Source: Octopus sinensis (taxonomy: Eukaryota). Taken from it: DNA of 7,528 nucleotides. The translations under genes and the position numbers were made by a program. Positions 976 to 7,439 of this stretch are shown here, piece after piece. The stretch spans positions 1-7,528 of the forward strand of contig NW_021828852.1 in the NCBI RefSeq assembly GCF_006345805.1, given 5' to 3'. Positions within the stretch are counted from its first letter, which is position 1; each line of letters begins with the position of its first letter. Below the pieces are notes generated by a model that was not told the DNA's origin, did not search any database, and was given only the letters and a program-made list of their open reading frames with translations.

Positions 976-1157
976 TACATAAAACCACATTACACCCTGT
1001 AAAGTGGTTGGCATTTTGAAGGGCGTCCAGCCATAGAGACAATGCGAATCAGATTGGAGTCTGGTACAATTCCTCAGTTTGCCAGCTCTGGTCGCACTGT
1101 CCAACCCATGCCAGCATGGACAATGGATGTTAAATGATGATGATGATGATGATGATG
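976..1157 (+). mobile_element. 5'-truncated, diverged SINE 3' half ending in a (TGA)n tail
   Basis: TACACCCTGTAAAGTGGTTGGCATTTTGAAGGGCGTCCAGCC...GTCCAACCCATGCCAGCATGG...GTTAAATGATGATGAT aligns by eye with 7270-7439 in this window. There is no tRNA-like head. Confidence 0.85.
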
Positions 1158-2159: not shown

Positions 2160-2430
<271 letters not shown>

Positions 2431-2817
2431 AGGCGGCAGGAAATGACTGTGTGGTAAGTAGCTTGCTTAGCAACCACATGTCCTGGGTTCATTCCCACTG
2501 CATGGCACCTTGGGCAAGTGTTTCCACTATAGCCTCGGGCCGACCAAGCCTTGTGAGTGGATGGGAGACGGAAACTGAAAGAAGCCCGTCGTGTATATAT
2601 ATATATGTTTGTGCGTGTATCTGCTGTCTCTTCAACATCGCTTGACAACTGATGCTGGCGTGTTTACGTCTCGGTAACTTAGCAGTTCGGCAAAAGAGAC
2701 CGATAGAATAAGTACTAGGCTTCCAAAGAATAAGTCCGGGGGTCGAGTTGCTCGACTAAAGGCGATGCTCCAGCATGGCCGCAGTCAAATGACTGAAACA
2801 AGTAAAAGAGTAAAAGG
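2431..2817 (+). mobile_element. Full-length tRNA-derived SINE (octopus-type) embedded in TA microsatellite
   Basis: A-box-like TGACTGTGTGG (2444-2454); B-box-like GGGTTCATTCCC (2485-2496); body with an internal TA/TG tract (~2591-2620); tail ...CAGCATGGCCGCAGTCAAATGACTGAAACAAGTAAAAGAGTAAAAG. Matches my recollection of an abundant octopus SINE; family name not assigned. Confidence 0.92.
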
Positions 2818-2952: not shown

Positions 2953-2991
2953 AAGCGAGAAAAAAGCGAGAAAAAGCACAAGAATGGATAG

Positions 2992-3083
2992 GTTTTTAGT
3001 ACAATCGTTTCATACAAGGACTCTTTATTAAAGTTGCAAAAATTGCAGCATATAAACGTGTCCCGTACTCATCAGCTAAATAC
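2992..3083 (-). ncRNA. Type I hammerhead ribozyme motif (HHR-3) with an intact catalytic core
   Basis: Minus strand: stem I TTTAG(3080-3076)/CTAAA(2999-2995). Core CTGATGA(3075-3069). Stem II GTACGGGAC(3068-3060)/GTCCTTGTAT(3021-3012), 9 bp with one bulge and a G.U closing pair, enclosing a 38-nt insert. GAAA(3011-3008). Self-complementary stem III ACGATTGT(3008-3001). GTA triplet; predicted cleavage between 3000 and 2999. Confidence 0.85.
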
Positions 3084-3232
3084 ATGTGAGTTCTCTAGAC
3101 ATCCTAGTGGTTGAGGCTATATACTCATGAAGTAATGTAGATAATTAAGTAACATAAACAGATTTCCAAAGTTCATTAAAGTTCTTTAAAGATGATGTAC
3201 AGTCTTATCACAGAATTTTAAAAAAGTTTTAA

Positions 3233-3523
3233 TAGCATCACAGAGAAGGTGACTTAATCCATAGTGTACATATGAATTCCAGAGATATGAGGAGGGATTA
3301 CATACTCACAGACGACAAATTTATCCATTGCTAATCACAACGAGGTGGTTTCAATTCCTGCTTATTAGCATTACAGAGAGGGTGAGTTAATCCTTTGTAA
3401 GATGATGCACAATTTCCAATGGTGTAGATGTAAATTTCCAGAGAAATGAAGAGGAATTTCATATTCACAGGCGATAAATTTATCAATGGTTGAACACAAT
3501 GAGGTGGGTATCAATTCTTGCTA
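3233..3523 (+). repeat. Two diverged tandem units (133 bp; second ~158 bp with a ~25-30 nt insert)
   Basis: TAGCATCACAGAGAAGGTGACTTAATCC (3233) versus TAGCATTACAGAGAGGGTGAGTTAATCC (3366). Similarity continues through TTCCAGAGA..CACAG..AAATTTATC..CACAA.GAGGTGG..TCAATTC.TGCT. Confidence 0.85.
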
Positions 3524-3619
3524 TATGATTAGGTATTTGCCACATTAATCACATTACTGCTATTTTCAAGAGACTGTAGCTATTTAACTTTTAAAGGCTG
3601 AAGGGCTTTCTGGAGAGGC

Positions 3620-3806
3620 AAAGAACAGAAAAAGGAAGGAAAGAGAAGGAAAGAGAGAAAATAAAGGGGGAGGGAGCAAAGGGGGGGGCTAGAAGAGAAG
3701 AGAAAAGGAAAAAGAAAAAAGAAAGAAAAAGAGAATAAGAAGAAGAAAAAAAAGAGAAAAGAGAAGAAATAGGGGAAGAAGGGAAAAAAGAAAAAGAAAA
3801 AAGAGG
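3620..3806 (+). repeat. Purine-rich low-complexity (A/G) tract
   Basis: Almost only A and G, e.g. GAAAAAGAAAAAAGAAAGAAAAAGAGAATAAGAAGAAG. Confidence 0.9.
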
Positions 3807-4550
3807 GTTCTAGTTATACAGAAGAATTAGTAGACGGCAAGTCTGGTTCAATTTACAGGCATCTAGGAACTAGAGGAGAATATTATTCTTTGACCAGTAA
3901 AACAGCTAATTTATTGCTGTCGAAAGCAGCTATGAATTTAAAGAGAATCTAAAGAATAACACGGTTAGGGGTTTAGGGGTTTAGTGGTCAAAGGCTAAAA
4001 TCAAAAGAAAATACATTAGGAAATCTAAGTATAATCTTATCAAAAAGTCATTAAATTATTTATTTATTTTATTCATTTTACTGTCTTAAGGAGTTGCCGT
4101 TATTATTCATACATTGACGGACTACAGGTCAAATCTTAGAAGATCATTTACAAGGTGTTAGGGAATTGTCTATCATAATGAAGATAATCATATTATCACC
4201 GAGGGAGTAGCCTTATTTATTTAATTTGAAATAGAATTATGGGGCTTTAGTAACTCATTTTATTTTATTAAAGTTATGCTACTTAAATTAGATTAAGTTA
4301 AGAATTAAAATTAAAATTAAAATTAAGATTTAAATTAAGATTTAAAAATTTAAATTATGAGTTTGAATTAAATAAAGCCTCAATTAAGCAGCGTATAAGT
4401 ACTATTCATTTCCCTGTTCTCAACAAACTGATGTAGATATAAGGAAAAAGATAACTGTAGTGTGAGAACTCTTAGTTATCTACTTAAAGCAGTGCTATAC
4501 TAGTAAAAATCAAGTATATCTATCTATCTATCTAGTTACGAATATTCTAA

Positions 4551-4745
4551 TCATTTAAAATATTTTAAAGTCTTCAATTTAGCGTGGACACAAACTTGAC
4601 CTAGTTCGATATGGTTATTCAATAAGTTTCTATGTTTTCTATGCTTTAGAATTTCATACGTCTCCATGGAGCATAGTTGGCAACCAACCCTGCTATTTTT
4701 ATACGGAATTGCTTTCCTAACTATTTCCCAATTAAGGTTGTAATT
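4551..4745 (-). mobile_element. C-terminal relic of a Penelope-like element GIY-YIG endonuclease
   Basis: Open frame to stop: NYNLNWEIVRKAIPYKNSRVGCQLCSMETYEILKHRKHRNLLNNHIELGQVCVHAKLKTLKYFK*. It fits the PLE endonuclease C-terminal pattern W-x-I...Y...CxLC..E...LLN.R.E....C.H..K..L. Upstream sequence is replaced by ATT/TA repeats. Confidence 0.8.
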
Positions 4746-4874
4746 ATTATTATTATTATTATACATATATATATATATATGTATGTATATATACACTCGC
4801 GTGTATGTGTACACGCACGTAGCTGTATATGCATGCACTAGCACTATGACCCGGCGTTGCGGGATCACAGTGCT

Positions 4875-5230
4875 CGTAGATTAATAATCCTCTAACATTC
4901 TTCTACCGCTGCCTGCAAGGTTAAATTTTGCTCCTCTTCTAATTTTGTTAATATCCGGGAATCTACATCTCCATCTTTGCGTGCAATAAACCCTTGAAAA
5001 AAAATTAAACTCGTGAACATGGCCGGAATGAACTCATTTAGTTTGAATTTGTCACACTCTCTGTTAACCAATCCAGCATAAGTGGCGAAATCTTCGTCAC
5101 ATTTTTTTACCAAATTTAAACATTGCCAGTGTCTGTTGTGTAGATGTACGTTGACAGATACATGCAAACGTACATCTACACCAACAGACACACAAACATA
5201 TATGGGACAGAAATTCTTCCACTGAAATTT
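4875..5230 (-). pseudogene. Ty3/Gypsy LTR-retrotransposon gag relic (copy 1)
   Basis: NRHWQCLNLVKKCDEDFATYAGLVNRECDKFKLNEFIPAMFTSLIFFQGFIARKDGDVDSRILTKLEEEQNLTLQAAVEEC*RIINL resembles Mag/K02A2.6-like Gypsy gag as I recall it. It carries an in-frame stop and a ~65-nt insertion at ~5138-5203. Confidence 0.8.
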
Positions 5231-5609
5231 AAGGTAAGGGAGTAAAAAGTTCATAGTATTCGCGTAAGTGCGTCTGTTCATACCTACACATGTGCGCCCG
5301 CACATACACATGCGTACGCCTACATTCATCCACCTTCAATAGAAAAACGTACACACCTTCACTCACGCATGTGTGTGTGGGTTTGTATGTATATGCATAT
5401 ACATTTGGCGAAGGATTCATAACTATTATTGCTCTTAGCAATATAAGTGACTCGTCACTAAAGATGTTACGTACCTCAACCAAGCAGCTCCTCGTAAGCC
5501 CCTTTTAAAACTTAGTATTTGACTTCACTTATATACATCATATACATACGTATACATAAATAAATCTGTGTGTGTATGCATATATATATGTATATGTATA
5601 ATTATTGAT

Positions 5610-5812
5610 GTTTGACTTAGGATGATAGGACGGAGAAGTGACATTTCGATGAACTAGTCTGATGTAATTTGAGTTCCATTATCAGTAACAATGGTATCCG
5701 ATATACCACACCTGGCGAACAATTCGTGTAAAAACTTATCGTAACCGCTGACGTCGCCTTTTTACATTTATGCACATCCGTCCACTTTGAAAATCTGTCC
5801 CCCCACAACAAT
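5610..5812 (-). pseudogene. Ty3/Gypsy integrase core (rve) relic
   Basis: Joining frames gives IVV-D-RFSKWTDVHKCKKATSAVTISF / LHELFARCGISDTIVTDNGTQITSD*F / TSPSYHPKSN. This matches the conserved integrase motifs DxFSKW, F..FG.P..IVTDNG.QF.S and T.PYHP.SNG. Several frameshifts and a stop. Confidence 0.88.
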
Positions 5813-6237
5813 TTGAACTCAGAACGTAGCGGCAGACGAAATACTCGTTTCTTTATTACCCAAAAGGGGCTACACATAGAGGGGACAAACAAGGACAGAC
5901 AAACGGATTAAGTCGATTATATCGACCCCAGTGCGAAACTGGTACTTATTTAATCGACTCCGAAAGAAAGGCAAAGTCGACCTCGGCGGAATTTGAACTC
6001 AGAACGTAGCGGCAGACGAAATACCTATTTCTTTATTACCCACAAGGGACAGAACACAGTGTAGGACAAACAAGGACAGACAAACGGATTAAGTCGATTA
6101 TATCGACCCCAGTGCGTAACTGGTACTTATTTAATCGACCCCGAAAGGATGAAAGGCAAAGTCGACCTCGGCGGAATTTGAATTCAGAACGTAGCAACAG
6201 ACGAAATACCGCTATGCATTTCGCCCGGCGTGCTAAC
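5810..6237 (-). mobile_element. Head-to-tail multimer of a tRNA-derived SINE (one near-full unit, one headless unit, one partial unit)
   Basis: ATTTGAA[C/T]TCAGAACGTAGC...GACGAAATAC recurs at 5811, 5991 and 6176 (periods 180 and 185). Minus-strand units are 6237-6025, 6024-5845 and 5844-5810. Each keeps a B-box-like GA[G/A]TTCAAATT. The first ~20 nt of the head (present at 7159-7179) are missing. Confidence 0.92.
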
Positions 6238-6238
6238 G

Positions 6239-6625
6239 TAGATTCAGTGTTCATATTTTTTTTCTTGCCCGACGCCAGTTGACACACTTGAATCTGAGAG
6301 CAATCTTTCTCTTCAATTTTATTTGCGTCACGTCATAAATTAATAATCCTCTGACATTCTTCTAGTACTGCCGGCAGGATTAAATTTGATCCTGATCAAG
6401 TTTTGCTAATATTTAGGATGGTATATCTCCATCATTTTTTGCAGTAAGCTCTTGAACAAAAATGAAAGACTTGAACATATCCGGAGTGATTTCATTCAAT
6501 TTCAATTTCCCACGCTCTCTGTTAACCACTCCAAATAGGTGACGAAATCTTCGTCGTCTTTTTTGACCAAATTTAAACATTGCAAGTGAGTATTGAACAG
6601 GGAACTTCTTCCACCGAAAATCTCT
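6239..6625 (-). pseudogene. Ty3/Gypsy gag relic (copy 2)
   Basis: EIFGGRSSLFNTHLQCLNLVKKDDEDFVTY/GVVNRERGKLKLNEITPDMFKSFIFVQELTAKNDGDIPS*ILAKLDQDQ/LILPAVLEECQRIINL*RDANKIEEKDCSQIQ. Clearly homologous to 4875-5230 (offset ~1458 bp). Frameshifts and stops present. Confidence 0.85.
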
Positions 6626-7158: not shown

Positions 7159-7435
7159 AGGCGGCGAGCTGGCAGAACTGTTAGCACGCCGGGCGAAATG
7201 CGTAGCCGTATTTCGTCTGCTGTTACGTTCTGAGTTCAAATTCCGCCGAGGTCGCCGGTGGCGCATAAAAGTACCCACTACACTCTCGGAGTGGTTGGCG
7301 TTAGGAAGGGCATCCAGCTGTAGAAACTCTGCCAGATCAGATTGGAGCCTGGTGCGGCCATCAGGTTCGCCAGACCTCATTCAAATCGTCCAACCCATGC
7401 TAGCATGGAAAGCAGACGTTAAACGATGATGAGGA

Positions 7436-7439
<4 letters not shown>
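7159..7439 (+). mobile_element. Probable chimeric SINE: head of the 5810-6237 family fused to the 3' half of the 976-1157 family
   Basis: 7180-7254 matches revcomp(6163-6237) at 70/75 nt. The sequence then switches after GAGGTCG to CCGGTGGCGCATAAAAGTACCCACTACACTCTCGGAGTGGTTGGCGTTAGGAAGGGCATCC...CCAACCCATGCTAGCATGG...GTTAAACGATGATGAGGATGAT. Confidence 0.85.

What the first reader, a model, noticed from the sequence alone, without database searches (positions are those of the whole stretch)
2992..3083. HHR-3: best-preserved hammerhead, all catalytic nucleotides intact
Seen: C3-U4-G5-A6-U7-G8-A9, G12-A13-A14-A15.1, U16.1-A17, a 5-bp stem I extendable past one mismatch, and a 9-bp stem II. The 38-nt stem II insert can fold further (UUUAU/AUAAA; UGCAA-UUU-UUGCA). 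The only core-adjacent defect is G10.1.U11.1, consistent with CpG decay of CGAAA. Inference: the most likely of the three to be active. It would cut any minus-strand transcript or pre-mRNA crossing position 3000.
Basis: partly seen in the sequence, partly recalled or inferred. Interest (0 to 1): 0.8.

Follow-up and report, generated by a model that had tools for sequence, protein, structure and literature searches.

The report
Decayed solitary hammerhead ribozyme relic
The minus strand at 3083-2992 really does carry a complete type I hammerhead ribozyme core with all three helices, far more than chance would give in 7.5 kb. It looks like a lone, weakened relic of a retroelement-borne ribozyme, not an enzyme that would reliably cut transcripts today.

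Summary
**Observation: confirmed.** Read 5'->3', minus strand 3083-2992 is helix I / CUGAUGA / helix II / GAAA / 2-bp helix III with a GAUU loop / UA|C / helix I. Every catalytic nucleotide is intact, and the cleavage site is 3000|2999.

**Chance.** In 200 Mb of composition-matched random sequence, a motif this good or slightly worse turned up 0-1 times. That puts the chance of one in this window at about 1e-5 to 1e-4. A 2.8-Gb genome would still hold a few to about 50 chance copies.

**Best reading (0.6).** It is a solitary relic of the type I hammerheads carried by metazoan Penelope-like elements and non-LTR retrozymes:
- Helix I is short and AU-rich, and helix II is long.
- The helix III box ACGAUUGU is quasi-palindromic, which suits ribozymes that work as dimers.
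- The motif ends 46 nt from a (TA)n/(TATC)n microsatellite.

**The activity claim is not supported:**
- Rfam Hammerhead_1 scores 15 bits against a threshold of 34.
- The 10.1-11.1 pair is G.U, not the canonical G-C.
- Loop 2 is replaced by a 38-nt extension.
- Helix III is unstable.
- No second copy is present to form a dimer.
- The hammerhead fold is 5.7 kcal/mol worse than a competing fold that buries the core and the cleavage site.

No paralogues or adjacent retroelement coding remnants could be found, so family membership is inferred.

**Verdict:** ordinary, low interest.

The parts
2992..3083 (-). Whole type I hammerhead-like motif (92 nt)
   Evidence: Sequence. Descriptor hit with 0 core mismatches. 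Rfam Hammerhead_1 full-length alignment 2994-3081, 15.0 bits.
3076..3083 (-). Helix I, 5' strand GUAUUUAG
   Evidence: Pairs with 2999-2992: 5 bp, an A.A mismatch, then 2 bp.
3069..3075 (-). Core box C3-U4-G5-A6-U7-G8-A9 (CUGAUGA)
   Evidence: The only exact CTGATGA in the window on either strand.
3060..3068 (-). Helix II, 5' strand GUACGGGAC (G10.1 = 3068)
   Evidence: Pairs with 3021-3012, either as 7 contiguous pairs or as 4 bp + bulged U + 5 bp.
3022..3059 (-). 38-nt extension replacing loop 2, which folds into an imperfect hairpin
   Evidence: MFE structures. The helix II domain alone gives -11.7 kcal/mol, z = -1.52.
3012..3021 (-). Helix II, 3' strand GUCCUUGUAU (U11.1 = 3012)
   Evidence: G10.1.U11.1 is a wobble pair where G-C is canonical.
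3008..3011 (-). Core box G12-A13-A14-A15.1 (GAAA)
   Evidence: Sequence.
3001..3008 (-). Helix III box ACGAUUGU: A15.1-U16.1 and C15.2-G16.2 with a GAUU loop. It is quasi-palindromic.
   Evidence: Rfam aligns it to the consensus palindrome ACGcgCGU with no non-canonical pair flagged. The self-duplex is 8 bp at -5.8 kcal/mol, while the 2-bp hairpin costs +1.0.
2999..3000 (-). Predicted cleavage site, between A17 (3000) and C1.1 (2999)
   Evidence: Position follows from the hammerhead numbering applied to the sequence. Cleavage itself was not tested.
2992..2999 (-). Helix I, 3' strand CUAAAAAC
2954..2991 (-). Unique 3' tail between the motif and the microsatellite. It includes an 11-nt tandem duplication (AAGCGAGAAAA x2.1 on the + strand). 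This may be the 3' end of the element (inferred).
   Evidence: TRF rows 2953-2975 and 2819-2953. Elements of this kind end tens of nt past the hammerhead and prefer microsatellite targets (PMC8557442; PMC11167929).

Best explanation
This is a solitary, partly decayed copy of a type I hammerhead ribozyme of the kind carried by metazoan Penelope-like retroelements (PLEs) and their non-autonomous derivatives, the non-LTR retrozymes.

In those elements the ribozyme sits near the 3' end of the transcript unit. It has a very weak, palindromic helix III, so it becomes active only when two copies pair helix III with each other. In the literature this is seen in tandem transcripts, and the presumed role is processing multimeric element RNA.

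I infer that a 5'-truncated copy inserted, in minus-strand orientation, next to a (TA)n/(TATC)n microsatellite, and that it has since drifted:
- C11.1 changed to U.
- Helix II carries several G.U pairs or a bulge.
- Helix I carries an A.A mismatch.
- Loop 2 holds a 38-nt extension or insertion.

As it stands, with no partner copy and a more stable competing fold, it most likely cleaves very slowly or not at all and has no host function.

Shown: the motif, its improbability by chance in this window, its architecture, and the unfavourable fold energetics. Inferred: the retroelement origin, the direction of decay, and the inactivity.
For: - Intact 13-nt core and three helices in type I order.
- Expected chance count per window is about 8e-6 to 4.5e-4, depending on how strict the descriptor is.
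[quoted passage not shown] - ACGAUUGU aligns to the palindromic helix III of the Rfam type I consensus with all four pairs allowed. It is one C->U transition from the perfect palindrome ACGAUCGU.
- The motif ends 46 nt from a microsatellite. These elements have their hammerhead near the 3' end and insert preferentially in microsatellites (PMC8557442).
- Most genomic hammerheads of this kind are reported as single, truncated copies.
- If the genome is an octopus, as I believe from memory of its SINEs, Penelope-like elements form a whole repeat order there, with an expansion about 56 My ago and 336 recent insertions (PMC13282606).
- Weakness of the fold.
Against: - No paralogue, consensus family or covariation could be examined, because no tool gave access to the source genome.
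- No reverse transcriptase or GIY-YIG endonuclease remnant lies next to it. There is no ORF of 60 aa or more within about 1.5 kb (the longest stop-free stretch that is not low-complexity is 59 aa), and Pfam found nothing.
- It lacks the unpaired nucleotide between A9 and G10.1 and the G10.1-C11.1 pair, both of which Cervera and de la Pena list as recurrent features.
- A 57-nt helix II domain is atypical.
- Rfam scores it 19 bits below the gathering threshold.
- Adjacency to a microsatellite is weak evidence in a window where microsatellites are everywhere.
- The source organism is not verified.
Confidence: 0.6

Rival explanations
1. It is a chance look-alike. AT-rich non-coding DNA happens to contain CUGAUGA and GAAA 57 nt apart with complementary flanks, and has no hammerhead ancestry or function.
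For: - A 2.8-Gb genome is expected to hold about 3 chance motifs at this quality and about 50 at I>=5, II>=4 (plus analytic scaling).
- If the window was picked from many, one of these could surface.
- Rfam gives 15 bits, E=0.55 even in a 161-nt search.
- The fold z-scores are unremarkable: -1.19 for the motif and -1.52 for helix II alone.
- The hammerhead fold is not the predicted fold.
- No paralogues or retroelement genes are seen.
- The helices are AU- and GU-rich.
Against: - For a window not chosen for this feature, the chance expectation is 1e-5 to 5e-4.
- Invertebrate genomes carry thousands of retroelement hammerheads, so a real relic is far more likely a priori.
- Features the descriptor did not ask for also match the consensus: G10.1, a C15.2-G16.2 pair, a G2.1-C1.1 pair, the quasi-palindromic helix III box, and the GUA triplet known from natural hammerheads (PMC1636495 abstract).
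Confidence: 0.25
2. It is an active self-cleaving hammerhead. It would cut minus-strand transcripts or a host pre-mRNA at 3000|2999, alone, by pairing in trans with copies transcribed elsewhere, or with protein help.
For: - All catalytic nucleotides are intact, and the G10.1 purine that binds the metal is retained.
- Helix II is long.
- The helix III box can form an 8-bp duplex with a second copy.
- Related minimal hammerheads show some cleavage as dimers.
Against: - The 10.1-11.1 pair is G.U.
- No recognisable loop 1/loop 2 contact exists.
- Helix III is unstable (+1.0 kcal/mol).
- No partner lies within 7.5 kb.
- The hammerhead fold is 5.7 kcal/mol worse than the predicted fold. Its Boltzmann weight is about 3e-6, unchanged by the U11.1C repair.
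- Intact hammerheads of this kind already have low activity, and in one tested element they were dispensable for insertion, with no RNA-seq ends at the site.
- There is no evidence that the minus strand is transcribed.
Confidence: 0.1
3. It is part of some other RNA or DNA element, such as a C/D-box snoRNA (UGAUGA as the C box) or simply a long imperfect hairpin, and the hammerhead resemblance is incidental.
For: - Sub-threshold Rfam hits to archaeal C/D snoRNA models sR35 (13.3 bits against 60) and sR18.
- 3068-3012 folds into a closed hairpin.
Against: - No D box (CUGA) lies near the 3' end.
- The models that hit are archaeal and score far below threshold.
- The hairpin is not more stable than shuffles: 15 of 200 fold as well.
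- This reading does not explain GAAA, the helix III box, or the helix I complementarity.
Confidence: 0.05

Closest known systems
Minimal/variant hammerheads in the pseudo-LTRs of Penelope-like elements (Cervera and de la Pena 2014, PMC4209133)
   Same: - Type I topology.
- Helix I of 5 bp with no defined loop 1.
- Helix II of 7-9 bp.
- A bulge inside helix II, as in the Drosophila virilis variant.
- A small palindromic helix III.
- Mostly solitary genomic copies.
- Low expected activity.
- A position near an element's 3' end next to a microsatellite.
   Different: - No unpaired nucleotide between A9 and G10.1.
- G.U where G10.1-C11.1 is canonical.
- A 38-nt extension in place of a short loop 2.
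- No flanking reverse transcriptase or endonuclease remnant.
- No family of copies demonstrated.
Canonical metazoan type I hammerheads of non-LTR retrozymes and satellite repeats, including newt, Schistosoma, mussel, coral and axolotl HHR_Amex2 (PMC7229834)
   Same: - The same core.
- Helix III of 2 bp capped by a tetraloop.
- Dependence on a dimer when helix III is weak.
- Low-GC context.
   Different: - Those sit in tandem repeats of about 170-400 bp, each carrying a ribozyme. Here there is one copy and no tandem unit carrying it.
- Those have a 4-bp helix II and conserved loop 1/loop 2 contacts, which are absent here.
Rfam RF00163 Hammerhead_1 (clan CL00010)
   Same: Full-length alignment to model positions 1-45. 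The core is identical except for the free position 7, and all helix III pairs are allowed.
   Different: It scores 15.0 bits against a gathering score of 34. It has a 51-nt insertion where the model has 8, and the first helix II pairs are not the consensus GUC/GAC.
Conserved intronic hammerheads of amniotes (HH9/HH10). I cite these from memory and did not test them here.
   Same: A type I hammerhead embedded in non-coding host DNA that could in principle cut a pre-mRNA.
   Different: Those are defined by deep orthologous conservation and efficient cleavage. Neither could be shown here, and Rfam kept Hammerhead_1, not HH9/HH10, as the best clan member.

Membership tests
Hammerhead ribozyme, type I (Rfam RF00163) | Conserved core C3-U4-G5-A6-N7-G8-A9, G12-A13-A14, A15.1-U16.1, H17 | tested here: met
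   All positions match with 0 mismatches.
Hammerhead ribozyme, type I (Rfam RF00163) | Three helices around the core, with helix I open | tested here: met
   Helix I is 5 bp (+2 beyond a mismatch). Helix II is 7-9 bp. Helix III is only 2 bp plus a tetraloop.
Hammerhead ribozyme, type I (Rfam RF00163) | G10.1-C11.1 closing pair of helix II | tested here: not met
   G10.1 (3068) faces U11.1 (3012), a wobble pair.
Hammerhead ribozyme, type I (Rfam RF00163) | Covariance-model score at or above the curated gathering threshold | tested here: not met
   15.0 bits against 34. Not listed in the whole-window scan.
Hammerhead ribozyme, type I (Rfam RF00163) | Loop 1/loop 2 tertiary contacts that give activity at physiological Mg2+ | tested here: not met
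   Helix I has only a 1x1 A.A mismatch, and loop 2 is replaced by a 38-nt hairpin extension. This is judged from secondary structure only.
Hammerhead ribozyme, type I (Rfam RF00163) | The catalytic fold is thermodynamically accessible | tested here: not met
   Hammerhead fold -10.8 kcal/mol against MFE -16.5. Competing hairpins bury the core and the cleavage site. Nearest-neighbour models ignore tertiary energy.
Hammerhead ribozyme, type I (Rfam RF00163) | Site-specific self-cleavage giving 5'-OH and 2',3'-cyclic phosphate ends | not testable with these tools
   Needs in vitro transcription or RNA end mapping.
Penelope-like-element hammerhead (pseudo-LTR) | Short helix I (4-5 bp) and long helix II (6-8 bp) | tested here: met
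   5 bp and 7-9 bp, compared with the description in PMC4209133.
Penelope-like-element hammerhead (pseudo-LTR) | Palindromic 15.2-16.2 / loop 3 that allows a dimeric helix III | tested here: met
   ACGAUUGU self-pairs over 8 bp with two G.U, at -5.8 kcal/mol. It aligns to the Rfam palindrome.
Penelope-like-element hammerhead (pseudo-LTR) | Unpaired nucleotide between A9 and G10.1 | tested here: not met
   G10.1 follows A9 directly.
Penelope-like-element hammerhead (pseudo-LTR) | Lies in a repeat flanking an ORF with reverse transcriptase and GIY-YIG endonuclease | tested here: not met
   No such ORF or Pfam match in 2954-4600 on either strand. Truncated solitary copies are nevertheless the commonest state in published genomes.
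Penelope-like-element hammerhead (pseudo-LTR) | Belongs to a multi-copy consensus family with compensatory changes | not testable with these tools
   The source genome is not searchable here. The metagenome 17-mer scan gave only unrelated bacterial matches.
Non-LTR retrozyme | Tandem repeats of about 170-400 bp, each with a type I hammerhead | tested here: not met
   There is a single motif. The neighbouring tandem duplication 3229-3522 carries no hammerhead and is unrelated to 2954-3228.
Non-LTR retrozyme | Expressed as linear and circular monomer RNA | not testable with these tools
   No expression data available.

The most novel reading that the evidence does not exclude
The motif is one member of an undescribed cephalopod hammerhead lineage in which loop 2 is replaced by a long helix II extension (a 57-nt domain). 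It would still be functional, either as a trans-dimerising ribozyme of an active Penelope-like or retrozyme family, or as an intronic ribozyme that cleaves a host pre-mRNA on the minus strand.
Probability: 0.06. Interest if true: 0.5.

Novelty: new member of a known kind. Interest (0 to 1): 0.2.

Why it matters
Little is at stake. Retroelement-borne hammerheads are already known to litter invertebrate genomes by the thousand, mostly as solitary, poorly active copies.

This locus would matter only as a pointer. No paper in the searchable library describes hammerheads in cephalopods. A genome-wide census seeded from this motif could show which Penelope-like or retrozyme families carry them there, and whether a long-helix-II variant exists as a family.

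For annotation, the practical message is that this site should be labelled a hammerhead-like relic. It should not be labelled a functional ribozyme or a transcript-processing signal.

Tried and rejected
- **Rfam on the whole window at E<=10**: no hammerhead. All listed hits are sub-threshold, and most (the mir-297/466/3149/1277 models) are microsatellite or inverted-repeat artefacts.
- **Second hammerhead search** with 2 and then 3 core mismatches and relaxed stems: nothing credible. Both lack a GAAA box, so there is no cis partner for a dimer.
- **Sensitive self-BLAST of 2954-3620 against the window**: the hammerhead segment is unique. Only an unrelated tandem duplication at 3229-3522 appeared.
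- **Metagenome scan for GCTGATGAGTACGGGAC**: 54 matches, mostly in GC-rich, apparently unrelated DNA. None has hammerhead architecture, so they are chance hits.
- **Six-frame translation of 2954-4600 plus Pfam**: no reverse transcriptase or endonuclease remnant.
- **Attempts to identify the organism or fetch paralogues:**
  - An exact look-up of the 145-aa ORF failed.
  - The gag-like fragment found only two homologues, on ENA ERZ21867824 contigs. Those share nothing else with the window.
  - A SINE-derived peptide found nothing.
  - My identification of the SINE-like repeats as octopus SINEs therefore rests on memory only.
- **C/D-box snoRNA reading:** rejected, because there is no D box and the matching models are archaeal.
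- **CpG-decay argument:** neither confirmed nor excluded (CpG observed/expected 0.84).
- **Supplementary sequence files** of the two key papers are not held, so I could not align the motif to published retroelement hammerheads.

Full report
**What is there.** The window is 66% A+T and consists largely of microsatellites and SINE-like repeats. On the minus strand, 3083->2992 reads:

GUAUUUAG CUGAUGA GUACGGGAC [38 nt] GUCCUUGUAU GAAA C GAUU G U A | CUAAAAAC

This is a type I hammerhead.
- **Helix I:** 3083-3076 pairs with 2999-2992 as 5 bp, an A.A mismatch, then 2 bp.
- **Core:** C3-A9 lie at 3075-3069 and G12-A15.1 at 3011-3008. This is the only exact CTGATGA in the window on either strand.
- **Helix II:** 3068-3060 pairs with 3021-3012.
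- **Helix III:** A15.1-U16.1 and C15.2-G16.2 close a GAUU loop.
- **Cleavage site:** A17 is 3000 and C1.1 is 2999, so the predicted cut is 3000|2999.

One qualification applies. The '9-bp' helix II needs a bulged U (4 bp + U + 5 bp). Without a bulge it is 7 contiguous pairs, three of them G.U.

**Is it more than chance?** I wrote a type I descriptor: CUGANGA, helix II, GAAA up to 70 nt away, helix III of at least 2 bp with a 3-8 nt loop, U16.1, H17, then helix I. G.U pairs were allowed. I ran it on 200 Mb of first-order Markov sequence with the window's composition.

| Minimum helix I / helix II (bp) | Hits in 200 Mb |
|---|---|
| 3 / 3 | 26 |
| 4 / 4 | 6 |
| 5 / 4 | 1 |
| 5 / 5 or more | 0 |

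- The candidate has I=5 and II=7.
- A simple product of base and pair frequencies reproduces these counts and gives about 5e-10 per nucleotide at the candidate's level.
- That is about 8e-6 for this window (4.5e-4 at the loosest sensible threshold), about 3 chance copies in a 2.8-Gb genome, and about 50 at I>=5, II>=4.
- In the real window it is the only hit with up to 2 core mismatches, and the only clean one with 3.
- Rfam is cooler. Nothing appears in the whole-window scan at E<=10. In a 161-nt scan, Hammerhead_1 aligns end to end at 15.0 bits against a gathering score of 34, E=0.55. The main loss is the 51-nt insertion in helix II.
- Rescaled to one family over the whole window, that E-value is about 0.006.

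So the motif is very unlikely to be a chance event in a window not chosen for it. It is not strong enough to be called from a whole genome on score alone.

**Would it fold and cut?** The predicted minimum-energy structure of the 92-mer (-16.5 kcal/mol, z = -1.19) is not the hammerhead.
- One hairpin pairs the 5' strand of helix I with G8-A9 and the start of helix II, and encloses the rest of the core box in its loop.
- A second hairpin pairs G12-A13 with the cleavage-site nucleotides.
- Forcing the hammerhead gives -10.8 kcal/mol, a Boltzmann weight of about 3e-6.
- The 2-bp helix III is a net cost of +1.0 kcal/mol.
- The box ACGAUUGU can instead form an 8-bp duplex with a second copy (-5.8 kcal/mol). 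Even so, two copies are predicted to prefer a non-hammerhead fold at -38.5.
- There is no second hammerhead in the window to act as a partner.
- Loop 2, which in natural type I hammerheads contacts a loop in helix I, is replaced by a 38-nt hairpin extension. Helix I offers only an A.A mismatch.

Nearest-neighbour energies ignore tertiary contacts, so this is not proof of inactivity. Every indicator still points to weak or no cleavage.

**Context.**
- Downstream in the minus-strand sense, 46 nt of unique sequence follow. They include an 11-nt tandem duplication and run into a (TA)n/(TATC)n microsatellite at 2819-2953.
- Upstream lie about 150 nt of unique sequence, an unrelated tandem duplication (3229-3362 / 3362-3522, about 80% identity), and a purine-rich low-complexity block at about 3600-3810.
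- There is no ORF of 60 aa or more and no Pfam match on either strand of 2954-4600.
- The hammerhead segment has no other copy in the window.

**Comparison with what is known.**
- Cervera and de la Pena (PMC4209133) describe thousands of hammerheads per invertebrate genome in the flanking repeats of Penelope-like elements, mostly as single motifs from truncated copies.
- A Drosophila variant has a bulge inside helix II and a small palindromic helix III.
- The 2020 retrozyme paper calls a 2-bp helix III with a tetraloop typical of invertebrate type I hammerheads (PMC7229834).
- These elements carry the hammerhead near the 3' end and insert preferentially into microsatellites (PMC8557442). In the one element studied biochemically, copies end tens of nucleotides beyond the ribozyme. 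There the ribozyme was dispensable for insertion and left no RNA-seq ends (PMC11167929).
- The candidate fits this picture in helix lengths, the helix III box and position. Rfam aligns the box to the consensus palindrome ACGcgCGU, and it is one transition from the perfect palindrome ACGAUCGU.
- It departs in three ways: no unpaired nucleotide after A9, G.U at 10.1-11.1, and the long helix II extension.
- I recognise the SINE-like repeats of the window as octopus SINEs from memory. If that is right, Penelope-like elements are a substantial repeat order there (PMC13282606), which makes a relic far more probable a priori than a chance match.
- The tools could not confirm the organism.
- No paper in the library describes cephalopod hammerheads.

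**Verdict.**
- **Solitary, drifted relic of a retroelement-type hammerhead, probably inactive as it stands: 0.6.**
- **Chance look-alike: 0.25.**
- **Some other element: 0.05.**

Membership in the hammerhead class holds for the core and topology. It fails the curated score, the G10.1-C11.1 pair and the tertiary-contact criteria. Membership in a Penelope-like or retrozyme family is inferred from architecture only. The finding is ordinary: at most a new member of a known kind.

Noticed in passing
window 5129-5191: Near-perfect inverted repeat that folds into a hairpin of about 24 bp (MFE -39.8 kcal/mol, z = -8.77, 0 of 200 shuffles as good). It explains the sub-threshold mir-466/mir-4536/mir-3688 Rfam hits on both strands. 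It sits exactly where the retroelement fragment 4874-5131 stops matching its paralogue.
   Followed up: partly
window 5810-6210 and 7180-7254: 2.2 tandem copies of a 181-nt SINE-like unit (90% identity), with an inverted partial copy about 1 kb away (93% complementary). The unit contains CGAAAC/GACGAAA strings, but no hammerhead architecture passed the descriptor.
   Followed up: partly
window 4874-5131 and 6333-6588: Two copies (78% identity, same orientation, 1.46 kb apart) of a retroelement gag-like fragment, coding on the minus strand. Only two homologues exist among 5.8 billion proteins. Both are on contigs of ENA assembly ERZ21867824 that also carry RVT_1 ORFs (with RT_RNaseH_2 on one), so this is probably an LTR-retrotransposon relic.
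   Followed up: partly
window 3229-3362 and 3362-3522: Diverged tandem duplication (about 80% identity, units of about 133 and 160 nt) just upstream, in the minus-strand sense, of the hammerhead. It has no hammerhead core and no similarity to the hammerhead segment.
   Followed up: yes
window 1003-1150 / 7290-7439 and 1569-1652 / 2832-2756: Further SINE-like repeat pairs: one direct at 75% identity and one inverted at 79%. Several SINE-like copies abut (TA)n/(TATC)n microsatellites (e.g. the copy at about 2432-2815, between 2163-2431 and 2819-2953), so adjacency to a microsatellite is not specific to the hammerhead locus.
   Followed up: partly
window 2163-2431, 2819-2953, 4760-4841, 5530-5604: All mir-297, mir-3149, mir-1277 and similar Rfam matches (20-41 bits, each far below its gathering score) fall on (TA)n/(TG)n microsatellites and are artefacts of simple sequence.
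   Followed up: yes
Neither has a GAAA box in register, and each needs 3 core mismatches to pass even a loose descriptor.
   Followed up: partly
window 2953-2975: 11-nt tandem duplication AAGCGAGAAAA x2.1 exactly at the junction between the unique hammerhead-bearing segment and the (TA)n microsatellite. It could be an insertion-junction signature, but this was not resolved.
   Followed up: no
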